Below, in pieces: positions 5,411 through 63,701 of a stretch of 64,000 nucleotides of DNA (positions are counted from its first letter, which is position 1; every line of letters begins with the position of its first letter). Source of the DNA: Octopus sinensis (lineage: Eukaryota); contig NC_043002.1 of assembly GCF_006345805.1 (NCBI RefSeq), forward strand, positions 15,004,001 through 15,068,000. The letters run 5' to 3'. The notes under the pieces are model-generated. The model was not told the origin of the DNA and did no database searches. It saw nothing but the letters and a program-made list of their open reading frames with translations. Both the position numbers and the translations under genes were made by a program.

Positions 5411-5570
5411 TCAGTATGGCAATAATAAATATATATTATGGTGAAAGTGTAGATACATTTTTGCCTTCCCTTATTCGTACATATATATACATACATACAT
5501 ATATACGTACATACATACATACATACATGCATACATACATGTATGGACACTCACACGTTGTTTTATATAA

Positions 5571-5994
5571 ACTTTTACTCTTTTACTTGTTTCAGTCGTT
5601 TGACTGCGGGCAAGCTGGAACACCGCCTTTACTCGAACAAATCGATGCCAGGACTTATTCTTTGGACGCCAAGTAGTTATTCTATCGCTCTTTTTTGCTG
5701 AATCGCTAAGTTACGGTGACGTAAACACACCACCATCGGTTGTCAAGCGATATTGAGGGACAGACATACACACAAACACAAACACAGACATACAGACACA
5801 CGCACAGACACACACATATCTATATACACATATATACGACGGGCTTCTTTCAGTTTCCGTCTACGAAATCCATTCAGAAGCCTATGGTCGGCCCAAGGCT
5901 ATAGTAGAAGACACTTGCCCAAGGTGTCACACAGTGGGACTGGACCCGGAACCATGTGGTTCGTAAGCGAGCTACTTACCACACAGCCACTCCT
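5571..5994 (-). mobile_element. tRNA-derived SINE family A (CORE-like domain, internal microsatellite, CR1-like tail), full length
   Basis: Head ggagtggctgtgtggtaagtagc...gggtccagtcccac, CORE-like ccttgggcaagtgtcttc, tail cagtcaaacgactgaaacaagtaaaa. Confidence 0.85.
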
Positions 5995-19213: not shown

Positions 19214-21040
19214 TGTATGTATGTATGTATGTATGTGTGTTTGTATGTTTACATTACTACATTATTCATTTTTGCTCCTCTTGGTTTCAGCCAACCGGTG
19301 GCGGTGATGCTAGAGCACCATGCCTATTTTGAAACTTTGCTTATGATTCTCTCTCGGCTTATTTACTCAGTCTGGTGGCGCTTCACATCACAACTCATGT
19401 ATGTTCCTTTGTCCCATCTGTCGACCCATTTGGTTTATGAGGGATTTTGACACCTCTGTCAACGTATATATATATATATATATATATATATCCTTACATA
19501 GTGACCTGTACGATTGATTGGGGAAGCAGTGTCGTTACAAATACTTGATATTTATTCAAATATTCCCAAGCTCTCAAACGTTTTTAATATACAGCTCTGA
19601 AAATTAGATGTGATATGCACATGCTATACATTTACAATCACAAATAACAATTGAGTTTACCATGAGTTCTAATTTTTCCAACTATATTTTCAATGAAGTC
19701 TTAAATAATTCTAAATAACAATACTCCCTTACATCAAAATGCGCACTGTAATTTTACAGACAAAAGAGAAAATAATATAGAAAAATAAAAACAATCACTA
19801 AGATATTAATTAATAAATCAAGCCATTTGGTTTGATCTGATTTCCTTTTATCTTAATCAAATTGAGTCTACAAAATTAATACACACTGTGTATTCAATGA
19901 TTTGGCTGTTTTTCTAATTAAAACAAACACCTGATCAGAAACAATATTTATAAAGCTAAATAGAATCTATCGCTTTGTGGTTTCTGGAACTTTCAATTAT
20001 GTTTTCAAAATTAAAAGCAAATATTACTTTTGCTATAAGACGTATATTCCGATCTCAAATATCAAAATTTGTATAGTGCGGTACATTTCATTCTATATAA
20101 AATATATTTAACTTCTTCTGGAATGATTCTGCAATTCCGAAGTAACGAATAAAAAAAATATTTTTAGGGTGAAAAGATCCTTGAAATTATGGTCATTGCA
20201 TACTACAGAATGTTGCACCTTTCAAGTTAAAGTTAAGACTGAAAACGAGTTGGAATCCCTGTTGTCCTTTCTGTGAAAAAGCTGGTGCGGTGCATGCTTG
20301 ACACAAATAACTAACTCTATGTGTATCAGGTTGATTTACATTAAGTCTGTAATCATTTAGAAGATACTTTTTTCTAAATCTGACCACACTTTTGGAATAC
20401 TCTATTATAAAGTTGTACAATGCTTAATGTAGAGTCAAATGGAAATTCTGTAAGTCAGTTCTTAAAAATATATGGTTTCTTTCATTCTAAAATATGTTCA
20501 TATATCTTAACATTTGCTTCTTCATTTATATTTCCTTGTTTTATGTCTGTATCAAGTAAATTCACTATATTTCAAAAATGAGAAAATATACTTGCACATA
20601 GCTGGAACACCTTTCAAGAATCAATAAAAAAAAATGAGTGGGAAGTATAAATTTTTATTTATGATTCTTTTTGAGAACTCAAAGAACACATTCACAAATA
20701 TATTACTTTTACCTTTTAGAAGAAACATTATGTTTGTAAACCATAACTTATCATTTGCTGTGTTTCAAGCATACTATTCATTCAACAAATAACCATATGT
20801 TTGAATATATCATTCAAAATATTGTTTTCTAACACTAAACTGCATTAATCTTTATAACGTATAGTACTAAAACTTCAGACATCATATATGATTGATTATG
20901 ATGGTGGCATCTATGCACCTTCATTTGAAACTATTTAAATTGTTTCTAAAAATCTATCAACAATTAGGATTACAGATTTAAGTAATGGTGTATAAAATGT
21001 CACCATATTATCATAGCGTTATGGTCACGTCTTAATATAT

Positions 21041-21338
21041 GCAAGAGTTGTGGCATACTCCTGTGATCCAGCTACTCGGAAGTTCGTTCGGTGGGCAAAT
21101 TTCAGAATGGGAATGTTTGGAGTTGGTATTTTATAGCAATCACTTGTCCGCGCTGAGCTCGGCATCAATATGGTGCATGTGAAGAAAATCATCAGAACCA
21201 GATTTTCTAAAGGATGCGTGTCGATACAGCCTAGGGCAGAAATACATTACGCAATAGCCCACGTGTCGAACAGTAGTGGGATCGCGCCTGTGCAAAGTCG
21301 TCAACTGCCAGCATGTTTGATACAACTGAACACAGACA
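21041..21338 (+). ncRNA. RN7SL: 7SL / signal recognition particle RNA homologue (298 nt) with a divergent S domain
   Basis: Alu-domain motif GUGGC...CCUGUGAUCCAGCUACUCGGA. Blocks UCGGCAUCAAUAUGGUG (21159-21175) and CAGUAGUGGGAUCGCGCCUGUG (21271-21292) match metazoan 7SL as recalled. Helix-5 pairings hold (21086-92/21325-31, 21121-26/21301-06, 21159-65/21263-69). A TTTT Pol III terminator follows at 21339-21342. Confidence 0.9.
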
Positions 21339-21614
21339 TTTTGTATAGGCACATGTGGATCTACTTGTTACAAGTTTGCTTCTGAGGAACATTTTTCTGA
21401 GATCAGTCCCACAGTGTGGCATCTTGGGCGAGCGTCCTCTATTAGCCACGACACATTCTTTATTTTCTCCCCTTGTTTCTTTCTGTGGAAGAGCGTAGGC
21501 TCGAGACATTAAAGAGTTTTTTTCACTTCCCGAGCGTTATCTCTTTGTGGTCTATACCACATGTCTTCATCTTTTGTTTTTCTGTAAATTCTCCCTATAT
21601 ACATATACATATAC

Positions 21615-21715
<101 letters not shown>

Positions 21716-21773
21716 TATATATATATATATATTTATATATATATTATATATTTATATATATATATTTATATAT

Positions 21774-21823
<50 letters not shown>

Positions 21824-21964
21824 CGATATAGTGTATATTTATACACATAAGGAATCCACTTAACGTGAATTCAACACATTAGAAAGAACAGCTAGGTTCC
21901 GTAAACCACAAAAACAACGGATACGATTCGACAGGAATAAATTTGGAAATGAAAAACATTTACC

Positions 21965-31744: not shown

Positions 31745-32351
31745 CGAAGAAGGCAAGCAGGGCAAGCAACAGATAGGCGGCGATGGGGAAACGGAAAATA
31801 ACCACCCGGATGAAAATACCTATGCAGAAAGGAACCAGTGGACAACCGTCCAACGGAGGAAGAAAAAACAGAGAGGAACTGGGGACAAGAAAACCCAGAT
31901 AACATGCAAATTCTTCCGGAATGGTACCTGCTGGCATGGAGAAACAGGGGAAGGATGCAGGTTCGCTCATCCCAGGCCCTATGGAATTTGCATCAAACCC
32001 ACTCGACCAAAATGCCTTAACCAAAACCAAGACCGAAACCAAAACCAGAACAAATACAAGCTGCCCCAGAAATATGCAGACATAGTGCGTAATGCCCCAA
32101 CAAGGAGAAGGCGCACATTTGCAGAGGAAATGCAGACGGCGGCAGCAGAACAAAGAAATTTTGTGGAAATAGCAGATAAAATTGTGGGACAACTGGCCTG
32201 GATACATCGTCTTCAGAGCCAGGGGCACTCACAACAGCACTCAAGACCACCACAATCAAGGGACCCAGAGTGGCCACCGCTGACACCAGCCCAGGTGCCA
32301 CACCGTCAGCCTTTATTGACACCCCAAATATCTCACCAGTGCTTCTGCTGA
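31745..32351 (+). CDS. LINE ORF1 (5'-truncated) with a CCCH zinc finger
   Basis: [23 protein letters not shown] (C-x7-C-x8-C-x3-H), preceded by a basic [10 protein letters not shown] patch. Confidence 0.75.
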
Positions 32352-33976
32352 ATGTCAGAGGTCTGGTGAAACCCACTAATATGAGTAAAATTCCTTACCT
32401 TAGGGACTTAAGCACAAGCAACCATGCAATATGCATAGCGCTGACTGAAACGCACCTGTCAAGCAGTATAGCAGATGCAGAAATACACATACCAAAGTAT
32501 ACTGTTTTTCGGTCAGACAGGAAGGAAAGAACTCATGGTGGGGTTGCCCTGTACGTCCGTGAAGATGTCACACCCATAGTACTGTTGACACACTCAAACT
32601 CAGTCTGTGACACACTGATAGTACACATGAAACAACCGAAAATAGTAATATGTGTCACATATCGGCCACCAGACACCCCTAGTCATGAAGGAGTGTTTGA
32701 AGATAGCCTCACAAGAATAGAAGAAGTCCTGGACAAACTGGACCAGGGTAACACCATTCTACTGCTGGGAGATTTTAACCTTCCGAACGTCAAATGGCCA
32801 CATGGCCATCTCCTCCCTGCAATGACATCACTTGAACAGAGACAGACAGAGTCCTTGTTGGCTCTCACACGCAAGTTTTTCATGGAGCAAGCAGTGCTTC
32901 GGCCAACAAGAGGTGAGAATGTCTTGGACCTCTGTTTCACAAGCAACCCGATGCTCATCCACAACATAATGGTAACACCAACAATTCTCTCAGATCACAA
33001 CTTAGTAGAGGTAATGATATATGGTATGAGAGAGTTAGTTGAGACGCAGCCATTAGAAAATACCACAGGCCTATCCAGTCTAAACTTCCATAAGGCAAAC
33101 TGGAAGAAGATCAACGAAGAGATCCGAAAACATGACTGGAGTACCTTCATCACCACACAAGACACCAACACACATTTCCAACATTTCATGACAACAATAC
33201 AGAACATATGCCATAAGTTTGTCCCGGAGAAAAAAGCTAGCGGGCATAGGAACGTTATTCCCAGAGACAGGAAAATACTTATGAGGCGAAGAGCTAAGCT
33301 CTCGAAGCAACTGAATGCACGGCAGAGAAACAATGAGGGACACCACCTGAAACTTTTTGAAACGGAAACTGCACTCAAACTTTCCTATGAGAAGGAGAGG
33401 GCAGAGAGAGAAGCCAGGGCCATAGAGAATATTAAAACAAACCCTAAAGCCTTCTTTAAATTTGCGAAAGAAACCACCTCGGTACACTGCAAGATTGGCC
33501 CACTCTTTGATAAAAAGGGCTCTCTAACTGAGGACCCCCAAGGGATAAGTGAAATACTAAAGGAACAGTATAAAAGTGTGTTCACATCCCCTCTTGGGCA
33601 CATGCAAATCACAAACACAGAAGTTTTCTTTGATGCCACAACACTCCAACACCAAACAACAACCATCGACCACATAGACATAACAGAGAGGGATGTAATA
33701 TCTGCCATAGAAGAAATAAGAATAAACTCAGCTGCTGGACCAGATGGATTCCCAGCAGTCCTCCTAAAAACGTGCAGGCATGCCCTAGCGGGACCACTGA
33801 AGAAGCTCTTCAGTGGTTCCTTGGCTAACGGTAAACTGCCCAGGGCGCTAAAAGAAGGCACCATATGCCCTATCCACAAAGGAGGGAGTAGAGCAGAGGC
33901 CAAAAACTACAGGCCAGTCTCCCTGACGTCACACATAAGTAAGGTCATGGAACGAATCATCAGAAAAAAAAACTGA
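32270..33976 (+). CDS. LINE ORF2, endonuclease to start of RT (568 aa open segment; RT continues through frameshifts to 35285)
   Basis: ORF track plus the motifs above. The frame breaks at the A-run 33964-33973. Confidence 0.9.
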   Translation: MATADTSPGATPSAFIDTPNISPVLLLNVRGLVKPTNMSKIPYLRDLSTSNHAICIALTETHLSSSIADAEIHIPKYTVFRSDRKERTHGGVALYVREDVTPIVLLTHSNSVCDTLIVHMKQPKIVICVTYRPPDTPSHEGVFEDSLTRIEEVLDKLDQGNTILLLGDFNLPNVKWPHGHLLPAMTSLEQRQTESLLALTRKFFMEQAVLRPTRGENVLDLCFTSNPMLIHNIMVTPTILSDHNLVEVMIYGMRELVETQPLENTTGLSSLNFHKANWKKINEEIRKHDWSTFITTQDTNTHFQHFMTTIQNICHKFVPEKKASGHRNVIPRDRKILMRRRAKLSKQLNARQRNNEGHHLKLFETETALKLSYEKERAEREARAIENIKTNPKAFFKFAKETTSVHCKIGPLFDKKGSLTEDPQGISEILKEQYKSVFTSPLGHMQITNTEVFFDATTLQHQTTTIDHIDITERDVISAIEEIRINSAAGPDGFPAVLLKTCRHALAGPLKKLFSGSLANGKLPRALKEGTICPIHKGGSRAEAKNYRPVSLTSHISKVMERIIRKKN

Positions 33977-35358
33977 TCACGTTCCTCGAAGAAACTAACC
34001 GTCTCACTGACACACAGCATGGCTTTCGCCCAGGAAGAAGCTGCCTTACGCAGCTGTTACAACACTACGACTGGGTACTGAAACAACTACTGGATCGCTC
34101 ACAGGTGGATGTGGTATATCTCGACTTTGCGAAGGCCTTTGACAAAGTCGACCACGAGTGATATGTCACAATTTAACTCAGACCGGCATAACAGGAAAAG
34201 TAGGTGAGTGGATACATGACTTCCTGAAGGACAGAAGCCAGATGGCTGCAGCCAATGGAGCCCTCTCGGGAAAGACACCAATAGCAAGCGGAGTGCCACA
34301 GGGCACAGTCTTGGGACCCTTGCTGTTTTTGGTGGCGCTCTCTGACATGCCTTGGTAGCACAACACATCCCTCACTAGCTATGCTGATGACACAAGGTAG
34401 CACAGGCAATCAAAAACCCAGCTGATGCTGACCTTTTACAACAAGATCTGGATGCCATATACAATGGGCTGAAGACAACAACATGCAATTTAATGCTGGT
34501 AAATTTTCAAGCCTTACAATATCAAGCTGTAAACACATATACATTAAAAAACAACTATACTGGTCCAGGAGGGATCGAAATCCCAGTATCGAAATCAATA
34601 CGGGACCTGGGGATAGACATAGTGACGATGCATCTTTTTCTTCACGCATCGCGAAGGTGGCGACAATGTGCAGACGACTCACTGCTGGATCCTGAGGACA
34701 TCCGGACAAGAACTGCGAGACCATGTTGACACTATGGAGGACATTTGTCCTAAGCCGCCTGGACTACGTGTCCCAACTGTGGTCACCGCATAGTGTGAAA
34801 CTAACACAGAGCTTGAGACAATCCAAAGACATTTCACCAAGAGGATTTCCACCATGAAAGAAAAGAACTATTGGGAGAGGCTTAGGGAAATCAATTTGTA
34901 CTCCTTGGAACGAAGACGAGAGAGATATGCAGTGATATACATATGGAAAATCCTGGAGGGACTAGCACCAAATTTTGGAATTGAGAGCTGTTCCAATCCC
35001 CGTACAGGACGTCACTGTGTGGTGCCAAAGGTCCCGTCTTCCACATCCAGGGTAAGGAGCAGATACTGTAATAGCCTGGGGTTCAGGGGCCCTCAGCTGT
35101 TCAACAAAATGCCAAGAAAACTAAGAGATCTACATGATGCGGATGTGGACATTTTCAAAAAACATCTAGACAAGCTGCTTTCCGGGATCCCAGATGAACC
35201 CACTGCAAGGTACGAAGGTAACCTAAGGGCAGCAGCTACAAACTCTCTCTTAGATCAGTGGCCAGCCACGCCAAACTGGACTTAGAGAGGGTAGCAACAA
35301 GGGCGGTGGCCCAGCATGGCCTCAGCCAGATGGCTGAAACAAGTAAAAGTGTAAAAGA

Positions 35359-40500: not shown

Positions 40501-41155
40501 GTAGAGTTTACGAAAAAAACAAAAGACGAAGAAAGGTGGTGTACAAAACAAACAGATGTGTTAGTATAGCGCTCAGGAATAGAAAATGTATTTTACGTTT
40601 CGCGCCTACGAACTTCTACAGAAAGGGACACAGGAAAAAATACAAGGAGAGGAAAAAATGTGTGTGTAGTGGCTAACGATCTGTCATGGTTACTAACTTC
40701 GGACAGAAGTGTCTCACAAGAGAGCGAAACGTAAGTCACAGAGAATTGCTAAAACCAATAATTAACGCAACCAAACTTCCAATAATATATTTGTTTTATC
40801 CTTTTCTGCCCATTTTTTCAAATATTCTCATCACACTGTTGAACTTCGTTATGTCCTTAACATGTCCCTGTTACCAAAGACTACATATATACATGTAATG
40901 TGGCAATTATGCAAAAAACTTTTTTGAATTCATAATATTCAATGTTGCAATTATGTAAAAAAACTTTTGAATTCATAATATTCTATGTTACTTTGACAAT
41001 CTTTTCCAAAGAGTGAAAACCGGGTAAGTAAATAAACATCTTTTAAATTGCATTTTCAAACCTTCTTTCGTATATATATAATCCATCGTGCGATACCCCA
41101 CAATCAACTTTGTTATATATTATATATATATATATATATCTATATATATATATAT

Positions 41156-44233: not shown

Positions 44234-44628
44234 ACTCTTTTACTCTTTTACTTGTTTCAGTCATTTGACTGCGGCCATGCTGGAGCACCGCCTTTAGTCG
44301 ATCAGATCGACCCCGGGACTTATTCTTTGTAAGCCCATTACTTATTCTATCGGTCTCTTTTGCTGAACCGCTAAGTGACGGGGACGTAAACACTCTAGCA
44401 TCGGTTGTCAAGCAATGCTAGGGGGGCAAACATAGACACACAAACACACACACACACATACATATATATACGACAGGCTTCTTTCAGTTTCCGTCTACCA
44501 AATCCACTCACAAGGCAATGGTCGGCCCGGGGCTATAGCAGAAGACACTTGCCCAAGATGCAACGCAGTAGGACTGAACCCGGAACCATGCAGTTTGTTA
44601 GCAAGCTACTTACCACACAGCCACTCCT
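44234..44628 (-). mobile_element. family A SINE, full length
   Basis: Head at 44628; tail ggcggtgctccagcatggccgcagtcaaatgactgaaacaagtaaaagagtaaaagag. Confidence 0.9.
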
Positions 44629-44869: not shown

Positions 44870-46139
44870 CGAGGGGCGTTCAATAAGTAATGCCCCTGAC
44901 CCATTTCCCATAGCAGTAGAGCAACGACACTTGGCACAGTTATTAGTCTTTTCATACATAGGAACTACACAGAGTTATGCATTTCTCCCATCGTTTGATA
45001 CAGCTCTGGACACCGTTTATGTAGAAGACCCCAGCTTGGTCCTCCAACCACGACGTGACTTCAGAAATCAAGGCTGCATCATCTGGGAAACGTTTTCCTT
45101 TCAAAATCAACTTCATGGCTGGGAAGAGGTGAAAATCAGAGGGTGCAAGGGGAGGAGTTCATAGCTGCACGCCTGTGCTTCTGATCTAGCGACACGCGAG
45201 TTGTGGACGGGAGCGTTGTCCTGCAGGAGGAGGATGTATTTGCTGATCTTGCCCCGCCTCTTGATTTTGATAGCTTCTCTTAATTTCCTCAAAAGTGAAG
45301 CATAATAGGCTCCTGTAATTGTGGTACCCTTTGCCAGGAAATCTGTCATCACTACTCCGCCCTGGTCCCAGAAGACTGTGAGCATAACCTTGTCAGCGGA
45401 GGGCTGCACCCTTGCCTTCTTTGGAGGAGGTAAGTCACGGTGCTTTCACTGCATTGAATGGGCTTTGGTCTATGGATCATAGTGATGGACCCAGGTTTTA
45501 TCCTGTGTGATCAGTCTTTTGAAATATTTTGACTCATCTTCTTGGCACATCTCCAAATTCATCCTCGAGCACTCAACGCGTTCTTGCTTCTGGAAAGGTG
45601 TGAGCAACCTGGAAATCCATCTGGCAGACACCTTTTCCATATGCAAATGGTCATGAATGAAATTTTCCACAGACCAGGTACTAATCCTGACCTTATGGGC
45701 TTTTTGGCGAATAGTTATGCGTTGACCTTCCAAAATGGCAGCCTCAACTTGACGGACAGACGTCTCATCAACGGCAGAAGGGGGCGACCAGATCTGGGAG
45801 CTGTTTCTACAGAGTTCCTACTATGTTTGAATTCACAATGCCAGCGTTTTACAAGGTCATATGATGGGGCATCATCACCATCAGTTACTTTCATTTCATC
45901 AAAAGTTTCCCGTGGTGTGCGTCCTTTCAAATACAAAAACCAGATCACTGCTCGACACTCAACAGGCTCCATTTCACACTTAACTCAGTTCAAACAGCTG
46001 TAAATCAGAAACCACAATTAGTTAAGGGCTGTGATTCGCCACTTAATCTATAGAGGTATAAATACGTGCACATGCAAGATTTCAGCTAGATCAAACAATT
46101 GCAAATGGGCCAGGGGCATTACTTATTGAACGACCCGCG
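44870..46139 (-). mobile_element. complete mariner (DD34D-type) transposon with a disrupted transposase
   Basis: TIRs cgaggggcgttcaataagtaatgcccctg / caggggcattacttattgaacgacccgcg with TA on both sides. Motifs MEPVECRAVIWFLYLKG (ATG 45972), ITQDKTWVHHYDP, KVMLTVFWD, LLQDNAPVH, LAPSDFHLFP. Frameshifts are present and HPPYSPD is lost. Confidence 0.95.
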
Positions 46140-46371: not shown

Positions 46372-46601
46372 CTTTTATTCTTTTACTTGTTTCAATAATT
46401 TGACTGCGGCCATGCTGGAGCACCGCCTTTAGTGGAGCAAATTGACCCCAGGGAGTCATTTTTGTAAGCCTAGTACTCATTCTATCGTTCTCTTTTGCCG
46501 AACCGCTAGATAACGGGGACGTTAACACACCAGCATCTGTCGTCAAGCGATGTTGGTGGGACAAACACAGACACACAAACATATATACACACATATACAT
46601 A

Positions 46602-46642
<41 letters not shown>

Positions 46643-46840
46643 TGTGTGTGTGTGTGTGTGTGTGTGTAAATATATACGACGGGCTTATTTCAGTTTCCGT
46701 CTATCATATCCACTGACAAGGATTTTGTCAGCCCATAGCTATAGTAGAAGTCACTTGCCCAAGATGCCACGTTGTGGGACTGAACCTAGAATCATGTGGT
46801 TGGTAAGCAAGCTACTTACCACACAGCCACTCCTGCGCCT
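46372..46840 (-). mobile_element. family A SINE, full length
   Basis: Head, CORE-like segment and tail. Confidence 0.9.
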
Positions 46841-51046: not shown

Positions 51047-53152
51047 TCTTTATATATAAAAGTGAGTTGTGTGTCTGTCTCCTACGATTTAGATTCCTAA
51101 CTACTCCCACATTTTGCGGTTCAGTTTAACCAAAACCGGGTATCTTATAGTCGTGATTCATATCGAGACCGTCTGGGTATTAGCGCGCGTCTACGATGAG
51201 TCTACGATTTAAAAAAATTAACCATCAATTTTTCCCATTGTTAATCCATTTTGACATATATAAGGGAAGTAACTCTCTAAAATTTATTATTAAATCTCAG
51301 AACGTAAAAAGCTACAGTAACACCCCTCCCCCTTTGTGGTTAGCCATATTGAGATGGCTATTATACTTTACATCTCTAAAAATGCTTATATAATTATTTC
51401 CCTTACAAACCCGAGCAACGCCGGGCGATACTGCTAGTCTTATTATAAAAGGCAGATTTTATCTGCCTCCCTTTGTCTCTTATAGAAATCTACAATATAG
51501 GATTTCTTCAATTACAATTTACCTAGCATTTTTAAGAGTAGAATGCATCCGGTCGTGCCAGGTTCAGTTTTTCAAATTTCAACCCCAATTAAGCAAAATT
51601 TAGAGAAAACTCACATTGTGGTGTCTAAGTCAAATGCTTTTCTTAGTGTGGGCTACAGCACACGCAGACGCACGCACGCACAAACGGAGCGAACTGTTTC
51701 ACTGACGCTATCACACTAATTTCTCCTCCTTTGTCTTTGCAAGTGTGCAACGATTAAAGTGAAAGTAATTCACTTTTTGTTGTGAGTGACTCTTTCACTC
51801 TGCATTCCCACTTCCACTTTACACACATAGACACGCAAATATATAAATAAAATTGTAAGCTAACGTGTGTGTGTGTGTGCGTGTGTGTGAGTGTGTGTGC
51901 GTGTGGTGTGTGTGAGAGCGTGCGTGTGTGTGTGTGTGTGTGAGTGTGTGACAGGAAAGTTTTTTAGGACGAATATAAGACCTAAAGTATATCCAAGTAG
52001 CAGAAAGATCGCCCAAAAGTGCATATAGATATTTAAATGTATTTATATATTCATCTATACACAGATTTATGTATAATGTGTGCGTATATATTTCCATAGA
52101 GGTAACCTTTCACTCCATACAAAGTTTTTTAGGACGAACATAAGATCTAAAGTCATCTCTAAGTAGCACAAAGATCGCCCAAAAGTGTATATAGATATTT
52201 AAATGTATTTATATATTCATCTATGCACACATGTATGTATAACGTGTGTGTATATATTTCCATAGAGGTAACCATTCAATCCATACAAAGTTTTTTAGGA
52301 CGAAAATATTTATATATAAAAGAAAGTTTGTGTGTCTGTCTACTCCGATTTAGATTGCTAACTACTCCCACATTTTGCGATGCAGTTTAACCAAAACCGG
52401 GTATCTTATAGTCGTGATTCATATCGAGCCCTTCTGGGTATTAGCGCGCGTCTACGATGAGTCTATAATTTTACAAATAATTTACCATCATTTTTTCCCA
52501 TTTTAATGCATATTTCTTTAAATAAAGGGAAGTAACTCTCAAACTTCACACCAATATGCGTGCTCATATGCGACGTAATATCACATCAGCAGCATTTCCT
52601 CACACCCTCCTTGCACATGGCGAACGCAAAATACCAGGGGATGAAAATGGTAATATTGCCATCGATTCCATTTGTACCATTGTTAAGACGCCTTCTGATC
52701 TCAGAGATGCAGTGTTCCCAGATCTACAAGCTAATTATCAGAATATGGATTGGATTGGCAAAAAGGCTATACTGGCCCCGACGAATAAAACTGTTCACCA
52801 TATTAATGAAGAAATGCTAAAACTCATTCCTGGGGAAGTCTATGTATATCAGTCTATCGATACAAATCCTGACCCAGAGGACGTCATCAACTATCCAATA
52901 GAGGTACTCAATTCCTTTGAGCACCCCGAACTACCATCACACTTTCTCAAACTTAAAGTTGGTGCCCCTATAATGCTCATCAGAAATTTGGTTCCCCCAA
53001 AACAATGCAATGGCACACGTTTGATCGTTAAGTCCTTATCTCCCAACGTAAACTTATATCAATATTTGCCTGAATAATCATCATAATTCAGTGCAATCAT
53101 TAACAGTACTTTCAAGCAATTCAGCCCCGTGCAACGCCGGGCAATTCTGCTA

Positions 53153-57459: not shown

Positions 57460-59652
57460 CTAGACAGAACTTGCCTCTCTACTCTCACTTTCCTCTTCAA
57501 GTGATACTTGAAGAAGTTGATGAGAGATTGACCAGAGAGGAAAGTGTTTGTCTCTAATCCTTTCAGGCGCGTCCACCAGATACATTCTTTCGCCATAGCC
57601 ACAAGTATGATAAAAATAGCTCTTCCTTCCGTTTGAAGGAAGGAGGCGTGACGATATTAACGATAGTCTCGGCTGATAACCGACACGTCCCACACGTGAC
57701 AGCAGTCGTTCGACATAAGCCCACAGGTGGGAAATTGCTGGACACTGCACGATTGCGTGCAGAGCGGTTTCGTCGCTCTGCCCGCATCTCGGGCAGGTCG
57801 GCCCCGTGTTTCTCGAGCCATGCCTATAGTGCTTATCCCGAACGGGTAGCGCTTCTCGGTAGCACCGCCAGGCCAGGGATCTCTGGAAGTTGTCCATAGG
57901 TCCCGGGCCGAAAGTCGTTTGAAACAGGCGGGTCAGGTATTCCTCGTCGACGCCCAGGTTTGCCCCGAGCTCGTCGTCGTACCTCCCCTCCACTAATCCC
58001 CTATAGAATGCTTTGGTTGTGTTGATGTCACTCAAGGTCGACCCGGGACGGCAGAGTTGCTTGAGAGCAACGCGACACTCGCGGTGCCATTCGCCCTTCC
58101 TCGGCCTCTTTTTGATCCACGACTGTAGTTCGGTCATGGAGACGAGTTGCGGGAATGCGTGCCTCACAAACGGCGACCACACCTGTTCACCGTCGTCTAC
58201 ATAGAGTCGGAGATGTCGCAGTCTCAGCGCGTGTCTGCGCATCATCAACCATGGTATGCCCAGCCCTCCTTTTAACGGGTGTTGACAGCAAATGGATCGC
58301 CTGACCATCGGGACGCATCCTTTCCATAAGAAGCGGAAGAGGATGCGTTCTAGTTTGGTGATGGTAGGGTCGGGACAAGGTACGACGGTCAGGCGGTAGT
58401 AGATGATGGACGCGATGTACGCGTTCACCACCTCCGCCCGACCTTTTAGGGACAGTTTCCTCTCGGCCCATTGCTGGGCGAGAGTGACCACCCTACTCAT
58501 TATCACGTTCCAGTTCTTCTCCATTTGGAGGTCCGGACCGAACCAGACCCCGAGCAACTCAACCGGGCCGTCTGTCCAACGTCCCACGACGGAGGTACTG
58601 GTGGACGGCATGGGCTTGCTTCTCCAGGTGCCGAGCCGCAAGCCCACTGACTTTTCTCGGTTGATTTTTGCTCCTGTCACCGCATCGTAGTCTTTCAGTG
58701 TCTCGCCGACCCGCTCGATGTGCTCGTGGCTTGACACTATGACGGTGACGTCGTCCGCGTATGCCGACACGCTCGTCCCGCATCCCAATTCTCGCGGGAT
58801 GCCCCTCAGAGTCTCCAGCTTCCGCAGTAGTGGCTCAAGAGTCAATACGTATAGAAGCGCCGAGAGGGGGCATCCCTGACGGACCGAACGTGCAATTACG
58901 AAAGGTCTCGATAGATGTCCATTTACGCGAATTACCGAACGAATGCCTCTGTACAAGGCAGCTATCCAGCCGCGGAAGACGGGACCGAAACCAGCCGCTC
59001 TCGGGACTGCCTCCAAGTATCGATGGTCTACCCTATCAAAGGCTTTCGATTGATCCAAGTTGATCAGGGCCCCACCCATGCCAGGTTCGTTAACTACCCT
59101 GTCTATGATGTAGCGCATCAGATGGAGGTTGTCATGGATGCTCCGACCCGGCACGGCGCACGTTTGTGCGTTGTCGACCAGCTTCTCGATGACAAGCGCC
59201 AACCTCTTGGCTAACACCTTTGTCAAAATTTTCAGGTCTGCATTGAGCAGCGTGATTGGTCTAAAGTTATCTATATTGTTTCCCTTGTTTGGATCTTTCT
59301 TCAGCAGAGTTACAGCTCCTCGACTCACAAAACCGGGTATGCTCCCGTTTTGCTGCCAGTTGCAGTATACCGCTGCCAAGACGTCCCCAAACAAGTCTGG
59401 CATACAATTGTAAAACTCGTAGGGTAGACCATCCAAACCCGGTGATTTGTCTCTCGAGCATTCTGCTATCGCTTCCTGCACTTCCGCCGCCGTGATGGCA
59501 CCTTCGCAGAACCCTGCCTTTCTTGTCGAGAGTCGTGGCAGGCTATGTAGGTAGGCACTGAAGTCTACCCTACGTTCTTGCCCTCCACTCGTCCCGAACA
59601 GTCGGGCAAAATGCTGCTGAAAGGCCTCACACATTTTACTTGGCTCGAGCAA
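57460..59652 (-). CDS. Tx1-like ORF2 reverse transcriptase segment (730 aa open; true C-terminus shifts frame and ends at 57378)
   Basis: ORF track plus RT motifs. Confidence 0.9.
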   Translation of the reverse strand: MLEPSKMCEAFQQHFARLFGTSGGQERRVDFSAYLHSLPRLSTRKAGFCEGAITAAEVQEAIAECSRDKSPGLDGLPYEFYNCMPDLFGDVLAAVYCNWQQNGSIPGFVSRGAVTLLKKDPNKGNNIDNFRPITLLNADLKILTKVLAKRLALVIEKLVDNAQTCAVPGRSIHDNLHLMRYIIDRVVNEPGMGGALINLDQSKAFDRVDHRYLEAVPRAAGFGPVFRGWIAALYRGIRSVIRVNGHLSRPFVIARSVRQGCPLSALLYVLTLEPLLRKLETLRGIPRELGCGTSVSAYADDVTVIVSSHEHIERVGETLKDYDAVTGAKINREKSVGLRLGTWRSKPMPSTSTSVVGRWTDGPVELLGVWFGPDLQMEKNWNVIMSRVVTLAQQWAERKLSLKGRAEVVNAYIASIIYYRLTVVPCPDPTITKLERILFRFLWKGCVPMVRRSICCQHPLKGGLGIPWLMMRRHALRLRHLRLYVDDGEQVWSPFVRHAFPQLVSMTELQSWIKKRPRKGEWHRECRVALKQLCRPGSTLSDINTTKAFYRGLVEGRYDDELGANLGVDEEYLTRLFQTTFGPGPMDNFQRSLAWRCYREALPVRDKHYRHGSRNTGPTCPRCGQSDETALHAIVQCPAISHLWAYVERLLSRVGRVGYQPRLSLISSRLLPSNGRKSYFYHTCGYGERMYLVDAPERIRDKHFPLWSISHQLLQVSLEEESESREASSV

Positions 59653-59946
59653 TTCGCGCCCCTGTTCATCTACCAGTGACCGAATGGTGGCTTTGTTGCC
59701 TGTTGCGCCTCTGCCACCCGGGCCTCTCTCGCGGCTCCAACACCTTCGTTCCTTAGAGCACGCATCCTAGCTCTGACAGCACATCCTTCGTGTTTGGCGT
59801 TGAAGTGTTGGTCGAGGGCAACCTCGCCGCCAAAACGTCGGATGCGATGCCGCTTCTAATTGCCTCTTCTAGCTTCTTAACTAGCTCACCCTCTACTCTA
59901 TTTCTATCTATGGCTAGTGATTTGCTGTACCTAATCGCTTCTGCTT

Positions 59947-60812
59947 TTACTGCTCTCTTGCGGGCAAACCACCATTGTTGTTGATGATGGCTCCCGTCAA
60001 AGCCCTCTTTACTAGTGTGCTAATCCGGTCTCTGAAAACTTGTCTGGACGGGAATGATTCGTTCAGTTTCCAGTACCCAGGACCCTGTCTATGTGCCTTA
60101 TCTAAGTCTAGCGTACACGTCACCAATTTGTGATCCGTGTAGCTGACTGTGTGGAATTGTGGACATCCTAAGTTATCCTTGTCTACTGTCCTACACAGTA
60201 TCCTATCTAGATACGATCTCGACGACCCACTGCGGTTGCTCCATGTCCACGTTGGAGCATTTGGGTGGTCGAGTCGGTACCTGTCAGACAGTTGGACTCG
60301 TCTGAGCAGGTCTCTGAGGCATTTGCATCCCCTTCTGTTTCTGTCTCTACCCACGTAGTCTACATGCGTGTCCAAGGTAGCATTCCAATCCCCCACTAAG
60401 AGTAAAGGACGAGACGTTCCCAAGAATACTTCTAGACGTCGCGAAAGAAATCCGCCCGACCTGTTAAGGGCGGTGCGTAGACTGATACGAGTCGAAAAGC
60501 GCACCCATTGCTGCCGTCAACATCCAGAACGACCAGTCTACCCTCCGGGTCTACGAATATCGTCTTGACTTCGAGATCGAGGCTCTTGTGAAAAAGTACC
60601 GCGGTGCCACTACCGCCCATCCTCGGCAGACAGGGAGCGAAATAAATGTTAAACTGTCCGCCAAACATGGACTTTAGGGCCCGTGGCTCGTGGAGTCTGG
60701 TCTCACTTATGGCTATGATTCCCAAATCATGTGACTTGATGTCATTTAGGAGGTATCCTTGTTTCCAAGGAGACCCCAAGCCACGCGCATTCACACAACC
60801 AATCTTGACCAT
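59947..60812 (-). CDS. Tx1-like ORF2 APE endonuclease segment (frameshifted near 60440)
   Basis: ORFs 60432-60842 and 59947-60504 together carry the APE motifs. ATG of MVKIG at 60812. Confidence 0.85.
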
Positions 60813-60960
60813 GATTCTATTGGGGTGTGTGCTTAAAAACACAAAAATGAAAGTACAGAGAGTTACTTACTTGTGTCGAAAGTTTTGGCTTCCTCGTTCT
60901 TTGATGTGTCTTCGAGGAGGTTTTTATACAGTTTTTGGGACAGATATTTCTGGAAACCCC

Positions 60961-63561: not shown

Positions 63562-63605
63562 CCACTACAATCGTTTCATGTCGTCAAATGACATTCGTCA
63601 GGTGG
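63562..63605 (-). ncRNA. type-I hammerhead ribozyme (left arm)
   Basis: CCAC-CUGACGA-AUGUC-AUUUGAC-GACAU-GAAA-C-GAUU-GUA-GUGG. Confidence 0.8.
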
Positions 63606-63657
63606 ATTTCCGATTTTCAAATCAGTTTCAATTGAACCTGATTTGAAAATCGGAAAT

Positions 63658-63701
63658 CCACCTGACGAATGTCATTTGAAGACATGAAACGATTGTAGTG
63701 G
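63658..63701 (+). ncRNA. type-I hammerhead ribozyme (right arm)
   Basis: CCAC-CUGACGA-AUGUC-AUUUGAA-GACAU-GAAA-C-GAUU-GUA-GUGG. All core residues and stems I-III present. Confidence 0.8.

What the first reader, a model, noticed from the sequence alone, without database searches (positions are those of the whole stretch)
21041..21338. Full-length 7SL/SRP-like RNA with preserved Alu domain and helix 5 but an altered SRP54-binding loop
Seen: 298 nt followed by TTTT. Alu helix 3 pairs GAGU/ACUC, and the UGU turn and CAGCUACUCG are kept. Helix-5 changes relative to human 7SL (recalled, not aligned by software) preserve pairing, e.g. CACUA->CGCUG opposite UAGUG. Two blocks of 17 and 22 nt are unchanged. 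Helix 8 (21229-21252) reads GCCUAGG-GCA-GAAA-UAC-AUUAC-GC instead of GCCCAGG-UCG-GAAA-CGG-AGCAG-GU. The GAAA loop and compensatory A-U/G-C pairs remain, but the CAGG/AGCAG internal loop has become UAGG/AUUAC, and helix 6 is weakly paired. Established: that loop is the near-universal SRP54/Ffh binding site, and the Alu domain binds SRP9/14 and arrests elongation. Inference: damage concentrated in the S domain fits neutral decay poorly. This could be a variant Pol III RNA that keeps SRP9/14 binding without SRP54, loosely analogous to primate BC200/Alu RNAs as translational regulators. A decayed paralogue remains a real alternative.
Basis: partly seen in the sequence, partly recalled or inferred. 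Interest (0 to 1): 0.8.

Follow-up and report, generated by a model that had tools for sequence, protein, structure and literature searches.

The report
Decayed 7SL (SRP RNA) gene relic
This is a real but badly eroded copy of the signal-recognition-particle RNA gene in a repeat-rich cephalopod genome; its damage is spread over the whole molecule, so it looks like an ordinary dead gene copy and not a specialised new RNA.

Summary
The 298-nt element at 21041-21338, followed by TTTT, is a true full-length homologue of metazoan SRP/7SL RNA. I fished 23 full-length invertebrate SRP RNA genes (plus two cut by contig ends) from metagenomes using an 18-mer of this copy. They score 164-283 bits, form 88-99% of the consensus base pairs, and all carry CCAGG/CAGCAG in helix 8. 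The window copy forms only 73% of those pairs (65% in the Rfam alignment). The SRP fold threaded onto it has about -9 to +14 kcal/mol, against an MFE of -86. It has changed 29% of the positions that are near-invariant in the panel. The damage is not concentrated in the S domain: pairs are intact in 18/27 (Alu) versus 36/49 (S), and invariant columns are changed in 6/23 versus 14/68. Changes are biased from G/C to A/T. GC content is 46% in the copy, 60% in intact genes and 31% in the flanks. Retention of pairing matches a neutral-decay simulation (P = 0.12). The TATA box that 16 of 22 panel genes carry starting at -34 to -30 is missing. Best reading: an old, non-functional 7SL gene relic. No cephalopod canonical 7SL could be retrieved, and expression and orthology were not testable.

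The parts
21041..21338 (+). Body of the 7SL/SRP-RNA-derived element. It is full length and colinear with the metazoan SRP RNA model.
   Evidence: Rfam RF00017 at 82.5 bits, E 3.7e-19, model positions 1-299. Aligned to 23 intact SRP RNAs in A1.
21339..21342 (+). T4 run at the 3' end. It sits where all panel genes have a Pol III terminator of four or more T.
   Evidence: Sequence; comparison with the 3' flanks of the panel.
21042..21080 (+). Alu 5' domain: helix 3 (21042-21048 with 21057-21063, 6/7 pairs), U-turn UGUGAU (21062-21067, with an A>G change at 21065), helix 4 (21067-21071 with 21076-21080, 4/5 pairs).
   Evidence: Six of 23 panel-invariant columns are changed here.
21085..21103 (+). 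5' strand of the Alu-proximal part of helix 5. It pairs with 21321-21339 in only 8 of 15 positions.
   Evidence: in the Rfam alignment the first 12 pairs of helix 5 read xxx||x|||xxx.
21148..21175 (+). Best-kept block: the 5' strand of distal helix 5 and the junction. It contains the 18-mer AGCTCGGCATCAATATGG (21156-21173) that I used to fish the panel.
   Evidence: H5f 14/15 pairs.
21166..21205 (+). Helix 6 remnant. The tetraloop GAAA (21184-21187) still fits GNAR, but the closing pair is A.A and the stem forms 10/15 pairs.
21218..21261 (+). Helix 8 remnant. The GAAA tetraloop (21239-21242) is kept. The 5' side reads CUAGG (C>U at 21232). The 3' side reads AUUA instead of AGCA (21247 G>U, 21248 C>U). 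There is a 4-nt insertion on the 5' side. The stem forms 6/11 pairs.
   Evidence: All 23 panel genes read CCAGG...CAGCAG.
21263..21292 (+). Second well-kept block: the 3' strand of distal helix 5, including CAGTAGTGGGATCGCGCCTGTG at 21271-21292.
20991..21040 (+). Upstream flank. TATAAA lies at -50 (20991-20996), ATTATCAT at -34..-27 (21007-21014) and TAATATAT at -9..-2 (21032-21039). There is no canonical TATA hexamer starting at -34 to -30, where 16 of 22 intact panel genes have one.
21389..21850 (.). Unrelated neighbour: a dispersed SINE-like repeat (21389-21595) with other copies in the window in the opposite orientation, followed by a (TA)n/(TATACA)n microsatellite (21596-21850).
   Evidence: Self-BLAST.

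Best explanation
This is an old, non-functional relic (pseudogene) of the SRP/7SL RNA gene in a cephalopod, octopod-like genome. An SRP RNA gene copy landed or was left at this site. Its mode of origin is unresolved. A DNA-level duplication is slightly favoured, because there is no A-rich tail or target-site duplication and the T-run terminator is in place. The copy then lost selection and accumulated about 0.3-0.4 substitutions per site, mostly G/C to A/T, drifting toward the AT-rich composition of its surroundings. As a result the RNA, if it were made at all, could no longer adopt the SRP rod. The universal SRP54-binding loop of helix 8 is destroyed, helix 6 and the Alu-proximal stem are eroded, and no correctly placed TATA box is left.

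Shown here: homology, loss of pairing, loss of motifs, compositional drift, and the even spread of damage between the Alu and S domains. Inferred: lack of transcription and function, the mode of origin, and the age.
For: - Rfam score: 82.5 bits here, against 164-283 bits for 25 intact invertebrate SRP RNA genes that share the same 18-mer. Even a copy rearranged by internal tandem duplications scores 173.8 bits.
- Consensus pairs that are canonical: 73% here against 88-99% in the panel, and 78/120 in the Rfam alignment. The panel structure itself covaries strongly, with 37 pairs changed on both sides and 0 of 500 shuffles reaching the observed values.
- Energy of the SRP fold threaded onto the sequence: +13.8 kcal/mol (MAFFT alignment) or -9.4 kcal/mol (Rfam alignment), against an MFE of -86. 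The panel gives -52 to -118 kcal/mol.
- 45 of 154 near-invariant columns are changed (29%, Jukes-Cantor distance 0.37). These include AGCA>AUUA and CCAGG>CUAGG.
- Damage is evenly spread: Alu versus S pairs 18/27 versus 36/49 (p = 0.60), and invariant columns changed 6/23 versus 14/68 (p = 0.57).
- A neutral-decay simulation reproduces the number of surviving pairs (P = 0.12).
- GC>AT changes occur at 30/102 sites and AT>GC at 8/52. GC content is 46% here, 60% in the panel and 31% in the flanks.
- There is no TATA hexamer starting at -34 to -30, where 16 of 22 panel genes have one.
- The setting is a repeat desert of LINEs, a mariner remnant, a Pif1 fragment, SINE-like repeats and microsatellites.
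- Mutated extra SRP RNA copies beside one canonical copy are documented in another lophotrochozoan (PMC2770079).
Against: - The canonical 7SL gene of this species or of any cephalopod could not be retrieved, so the ancestor is approximated by a non-cephalopod panel.
- The copy is still full length with few indels, keeps a T4 terminator, and keeps the H3/H4 hairpins (10/12 pairs).
- Two long unchanged blocks form the two strands of distal helix 5. Taken together, two runs of this length have a permutation P of about 0.01, or 0.12 once the 18-mer I fished with is excluded. A post-hoc split of helices is uneven (45/54 versus 24/41, p = 0.01).
- The MFE z-score did not discriminate: -0.77 here, while intact panel genes range from -4.9 to +0.6.
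- Expression was not testable.
Confidence: 0.88

Rival explanations
1. A specialised, transcribed 7SL variant. Pol III would still transcribe it, and the RNA would bind SRP9/14 through its Alu 5' hairpins but not SRP19 or SRP54, acting like scAlu or BC200-type RNAs.
For: H3 and H4 keep 10/12 pairs. The loop sequences GUGGC and AGCUACUC, which make the tertiary loop-loop contact, are present, as is a T4 terminator. Helix 8 and helix 6 motifs are hit. There is mild unevenness of decay.
Against: The Alu domain as a whole is no better kept than the S domain (18/27 versus 36/49 pairs; 6/23 versus 14/68 invariant columns changed). The Alu-proximal helix 5 stem, needed for the folded Alu domain, forms 8/15 pairs. 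The U-turn carries a change at a panel-invariant A (21065). There is no TATA box at the conserved position. Pairing retention and the substitution spectrum fit neutral decay.
Confidence: 0.05
2. One member of a dispersed, 7SL-derived repeat family (a SINE-like element or a retrocopy made by the abundant LINEs of this genome).
For: LINE endonuclease and reverse-transcriptase ORFs are plentiful in the window. A SINE-like repeat lies just downstream. A Pol III transcript ending in U's could carry the T-run into a retrocopy.
Against: This is the only copy in 64 kb even at E<=1. The complete S domain is retained, unlike Alu/B1-type SINEs. There is no A-rich or LINE-derived tail. Only one chance-level 6-mer is shared between the flanks.
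Confidence: 0.04
3. It is the working SRP RNA gene of this species, merely very divergent.
For: It passes the Rfam gathering score, is full length and has a terminator.
Against: The universal AGCA/AGG SRP54-binding loop is lost. 27-35% of pairs are broken. The SRP fold is not thermodynamically viable. The score lies 80-200 bits below every intact comparator. A bivalve 7SL-derived tail keeps the helix 8 motif at the codon-determined bases.
Confidence: 0.02

Closest known systems
Metazoan SRP RNA / 7SL RNA (Rfam RF00017, clan CL00003)
   Same: The same length, order of helices 2-3-4-5-6-8, U-turn, GNAR-type helix 6 loop, GNRA helix 8 loop, distal helix 5 blocks and terminal T-run.
   Different: It scores 82.5 bits against 164-283. 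Some 27-35% of pairs are broken. AGCA has become AUUA and CCAGG has become CUAGG in the SRP54 site. The helix 6 closing pair is lost. GC content is 46% against 60%. The upstream TATA box is missing.
7SL/SRP RNA pseudogenes and mutated extra copies. Humans have many (my own knowledge). Schistosoma mansoni has one almost canonical SRP RNA plus candidates with point mutations (PMC2770079).
   Same: A full-length or near full-length gene copy with scattered point mutations, sitting outside any recognisable functional context.
   Different: Nothing of substance. This one is unusually old (about 0.37 substitutions per site at normally constrained positions) yet still colinear.
7SL-derived SINEs and small RNAs of mammals (Alu, B1, scAlu, BC200, 4.5S)
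   Same: They derive from 7SL, and the Alu 5' hairpins are retained.
   Different: Those elements have lost the S domain, carry A-rich tails, are flanked by target-site duplications and are multi-copy or demonstrably expressed. None of this is seen here.

Membership tests
Functional metazoan SRP RNA (RF00017) | Covariance-model score above the curated gathering score | tested here: met
   82.5 bits against a cut-off of 70. Intact comparators score 164-283 bits.
Functional metazoan SRP RNA (RF00017) | Helix 8 with a GNRA tetraloop and the conserved SRP54-binding internal loop (5' AGG / 3' AGCA) | tested here: not met
   The GAAA loop is kept, but the 3' side reads AUUA (21246-21249) and the 5' context reads CUAGG. 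All 23 panel genes read CCAGG...CAGCAG.
Functional metazoan SRP RNA (RF00017) | Helix 6 hairpin with a GNAR tetraloop (SRP19 site) | tested here: inconclusive
   The loop GAAA fits GNAR, but the closing pair is A.A and the stem forms 10/15 pairs.
Functional metazoan SRP RNA (RF00017) | Long helix 5 rod that holds the Alu and S domains together | tested here: not met
   47/71 pairs in the Rfam alignment and 43/57 in the panel alignment. The threaded fold has -9.4 or +13.8 kcal/mol against an MFE of -86.
Functional metazoan SRP RNA (RF00017) | Alu 5' domain: helices 3 and 4, their loops, and the UGUNR U-turn | tested here: inconclusive
   H3 forms 6/7 and H4 4/5 pairs and the loops are present, but 6/23 invariant columns are changed, including the A at 21065 in the U-turn.
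Functional metazoan SRP RNA (RF00017) | Pol III signals: upstream TATA box near -30 and a T-run terminator | tested here: inconclusive
   T4 is present at 21339-21342. There is no TATA hexamer starting at -34 to -30, where 16 of 22 panel genes have one; only ATTATCAT at -34 to -27 and TATAAA at -50. Cephalopod promoter elements are unknown.
Functional metazoan SRP RNA (RF00017) | Expression and assembly with SRP proteins | not testable with these tools
   No RNA-seq or binding data are available.
7SL-derived SINE / processed retrocopy | A-rich or LINE-derived 3' tail and flanking target-site duplication | tested here: not met
   The 3' end is followed directly by TTTTGTATAGG. Only one 6-mer is shared between the 80-nt flanks, as expected by chance.
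7SL-derived SINE / processed retrocopy | Many dispersed copies | tested here: inconclusive
   A single copy in the 64-kb window. The whole genome could not be searched.
BC200/scAlu-like regulatory RNA | Alu domain selectively conserved relative to the rest, and expressed | tested here: not met
   Alu versus S domain: pairs 18/27 versus 36/49, invariant columns changed 6/23 versus 14/68. Expression is not testable.

The most novel reading that the evidence does not exclude
The relic is still transcribed by Pol III from its internal 5' elements and T4 terminator. It would yield an octopod-specific small RNA that keeps the Alu 5' hairpins and the distal helix 5 blocks (the SRP9/14 and SRP68/72 contact regions) but cannot bind SRP19 or SRP54. 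That would be a 7SL-derived regulatory RNA arising independently of the primate and rodent cases.
Probability: 0.04. Interest if true: 0.55.

Novelty: new member of a known kind. Interest (0 to 1): 0.1.

Why it matters
It matters little. The element is one more dead copy of a housekeeping RNA gene. Its practical value is for annotation: an Rfam hit just above the gathering score in a cephalopod genome should be labelled an SRP RNA pseudogene, not the SRP RNA gene. Only if it proved to be expressed and conserved would it bear on whether 7SL-derived regulatory RNAs have arisen outside mammals.

Tried and rejected
- I translated the element in six frames into one pseudo-protein to fish for spurious ORFs called on 7SL genes of relatives. 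There were no hits at E<=10.
- I repeated this with a 'repaired' version in which panel-invariant bases were restored. It returned only four annotation artefacts (a carp, a cichlid, the bivalve Dreissena polymorpha and one ENA contig), none from a cephalopod. DNA for the Dreissena protein was not on record.
- Exact look-ups of three window ORFs found nothing on record.
- The 18-mer gave nothing in viral contigs. In GTDB genomes it gave only chance bacterial matches, none 7SL-like.
- None of the metagenome loci shares repeats with the window, so none comes from a close relative.
- The MFE z-score is not a usable criterion. Intact panel genes range from -4.9 to +0.6 and the window copy has -0.77.
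- I considered rescue of broken pairs by A-to-I editing. Only about 5 of the 26 broken pairs are A.C (my count by eye from the strings), so I dropped the idea.
- Two literature searches for cephalopod 7SL found nothing relevant.

Full report
**Observation.** The Rfam scan of the whole window gives one hit above the gathering score. It is Metazoa_SRP (RF00017) at 21041-21339 on the + strand, covering model positions 1-299, at 82.5 bits (cut-off 70) and E 3.7e-19. It remains the only SRP-like hit at E<=1; the other low-scoring hits are microsatellite artefacts.
- a 298-nt body followed by TTTT at 21339-21342;
- the helix 3 pairing GAGU/ACUC;
- the UGU turn (UGUGAU, 21062-21067) and CAGCUACUCG;
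- helix 8 at 21229-21252 reading GCCUAGG-GCA-GAAA-UAC-AUUAC-GC.

The homology is therefore real and the coordinates are right.

**How intact it is, judged against Rfam.** I parsed the cmscan alignment.
- Only 78 of the 120 consensus pairs are standard pairs: H2 2/3, H3 4/8, H4 3/3, H5 47/71, H6 12/18, and the helix 8 region 10/17.
- Sixteen of the 68 upper-case (most conserved) consensus positions differ. They include the G and C of the AGCA motif, at 21247 and 21248.
- The minimum-free-energy fold (-85.4 kcal/mol) is not the SRP fold, and its z-score against dinucleotide shuffles is -0.70.

**Comparators.** No eukaryotic genome collection can be searched by DNA with these tools. I therefore scanned the metagenome contigs for an 18-mer of the element that differs from the human sequence as I recall it: AGCTCGGCATCAATATGG, at 21156-21173.
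- Of the 72 loci returned, 25 carry SRP RNA genes scoring 164-283 bits. Twenty-three are full length, and two are cut by contig ends.
- They come from termite-gut, marine and sediment samples. Their taxa are unknown, and none shares repeats with the window.
- They are diverse, with pairwise identity from 64% to 100%.
- Their RNAalifold consensus (96 pairs) is strongly supported by covariation. 95.6% of cells are paired, 37 pairs show changes on both sides, and 0 of 500 shuffles reach the observed values.
- All 23 full-length genes read CCAGG...CAGCAG in helix 8 and have a GGAG-type helix 6 loop.

**Window copy against the panel.**
- Pairing: the panel members form 88-99% of the consensus pairs and the window copy forms 73%.
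- Fold energy: the consensus SRP fold threaded onto each sequence gives -52 to -118 kcal/mol for the panel. For the window copy it gives +13.8 kcal/mol, or -9.4 kcal/mol with the Rfam alignment, against an MFE of -86.
- Identity: the nearest panel member is only 63% identical, less than any pair within the panel.
- z-score: the MFE z-score proved useless as a criterion, because intact genes range from -4.9 to +0.6. I give it no weight.

- Per-helix pairs: H3 6/7, H4 4/5, Alu-proximal H5 8/15, central H5 5/6, 8/10 and 3/4, distal H5 5/7 and 14/15, H6 10/15, the single junction pair 1/1, H8 6/11.
- At columns invariant in all 23 panel genes, the window copy has changed 6/23 in the Alu 5' domain. 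In the S domain it has changed 14/86, or 14/68 after removing the 18 columns fixed by my fishing pattern (p = 0.57).

What is true is that decay is somewhat patchy. The two strands of distal helix 5 are nearly untouched, while H6, H8 and the Alu-proximal stem are hit hard. A post-hoc split gives p = 0.01. A permutation test on unchanged runs gives P of about 0.01 when both runs are counted, and 0.12 once the fished 18-mer is excluded. I regard this as weak and partly an effect of how truly invariant the columns are. It is the only observation that leaves room for a more interesting reading.

**Signs of neutral decay.**
- At near-invariant columns, 45 of 154 are changed (29%, Jukes-Cantor distance 0.37).
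- The rates at paired and unpaired columns are similar (25% and 36%).
- G/C>A/T changes occur at 30/102 sites and A/T>G/C at 8/52.
- The element has 46% GC, between the 60% of intact genes and the 31% of its flanks.
- I applied the observed substitution spectrum at random to the panel consensus. This leaves 24.3 +/- 2.8 of 36 testable pairs intact, against 28 observed (P = 0.12).

They are mostly one-sided transitions to G-U, such as CACUA to CGCUG. Only one pair, in apical helix 8, changed on both sides from G-C to A-U.

**Gene signals and origin.**
- Sixteen of 22 panel genes have a TATA-like hexamer starting at -34 to -30, and all have at least four T's at the 3' end.
- The window copy has the T4 run. 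It has no canonical TATA at that place, only ATTATCAT at -34 to -27, TATAAA at -50 and TAATATAT at -9 to -2.
- There is no A-rich tail. Only one 6-mer is shared between the flanks, as expected by chance. A classical LINE-mediated retrocopy is therefore not indicated, and a DNA-level duplicate is slightly favoured. This point remains open.

**Context.**
- The window has 27-54% GC in 2-kb windows and about 31% around the element. It is full of transposon remains.
- Pfam confirms LINE endonuclease and reverse-transcriptase ORFs (32270-33976 on +; 57460-60842 on -), a mariner transposase fragment (45113-45409 on -) and a Pif1 2B-domain fragment (52556-53077 on +).
- A SINE-like repeat and a long (TA)n tract lie directly downstream of the element.
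- There are no tRNA genes.
- The 730-aa reverse-transcriptase ORF has its closest named relatives in Argonauta hians (66% identity) and Acanthosepion pharaonis.

**What could not be done.**
- I could not obtain the canonical 7SL of this or any cephalopod.
- The nearest approach is an annotated Dreissena polymorpha protein whose C-terminal tail is translated 7SL. It reads LLPAVFPPWA, the reverse-strand translation of the helix 8 region. This fixes the G and C of AGCA and the GG that follows, so at least one mollusc keeps the motif.
- Expression, orthology and genome-wide copy number are untested.

**Conclusion.** The element is an old, decayed relic of an SRP RNA gene. It meets the Rfam threshold. 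As a functional SRP RNA it fails on the helix 8 motif and the helix 5 rod, and it is equivocal on helix 6, the Alu 5' domain and the promoter. Comparable mutated extra copies beside a canonical gene are known in other animals, for example Schistosoma mansoni (PMC2770079). The specialised-variant idea is not excluded but has no positive support, and I give it about 5%.

Noticed in passing
L112:2288-3909 (ENA ERZ26168041, contig ctg190119): A 7SL gene in an unknown eukaryote has been expanded internally. A 54-bp unit from the 3' S-domain segment is repeated about 15-25 times and a 50-bp unit from the Alu 5' domain about 3.4 times. The locus still scores 173.8 bits on RF00017 and is called as a 570-aa 'protein'.
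   Followed up: partly
P0121, P0122, P0123: Annotated proteins of Cirrhinus molitorella, Dreissena polymorpha and Simochromis diagramma (an 'Ikaros isoform') end in tails that are translations of 7SL RNA sequence. These are probably gene-model artefacts that absorbed a 7SL gene or pseudogene as a terminal exon.
   Followed up: no
L002, L003, L007, L016, L023, L050, L056, L060, L061, L069 (metagenome Ga0224511): One metagenome holds at least ten different contigs with SRP RNA genes. Several share the upstream motif AGTTTATAACCCCG at about -32 and a downstream TTCGCGTTTT. This looks like a multi-copy 7SL gene family of a single unidentified invertebrate.
   Followed up: no
window 57460-60842 (-): A LINE with endonuclease pieces (59947-60842) and a 730-aa RT plus zf-RVT ORF. 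Its closest named relatives are in Argonauta hians (66% identity) and Acanthosepion pharaonis, which places the window in a cephalopod.
   Followed up: partly
window 32270-35285 (+): A second LINE: a 568-aa ORF with an endonuclease domain, followed by a 143-aa ORF that looks like a typical RT C-terminal tail. It sits in a locally GC-richer stretch (41-46% GC).
   Followed up: partly
window 45113-45409 (-) and 52556-53077 (+): A mariner-type transposase fragment (Pfam Transposase_1, E 2e-18) and a Pif1 helicase 2B-domain fragment (E 1.5e-14, possibly Helitron-derived).
   Followed up: partly
window 21389-21595, with copies at 40503-40642, 46742-46797, 5902-5942 and 44540-44585: A dispersed SINE-like repeat, typically followed by (TA)n/(TATACA)n microsatellites. 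The copy next to the 7SL relic lies in the opposite orientation to the others.
   Followed up: partly
window 63572-63691, 5474-5544, 46573-46655 and many others: Dozens of sub-threshold Rfam 'microRNA' hits (MIR7504, mir-297, mir-3149, mir-1277). All fall on AT-rich microsatellites and palindromic (TA)n tracts and are low-complexity artefacts.
   Followed up: no
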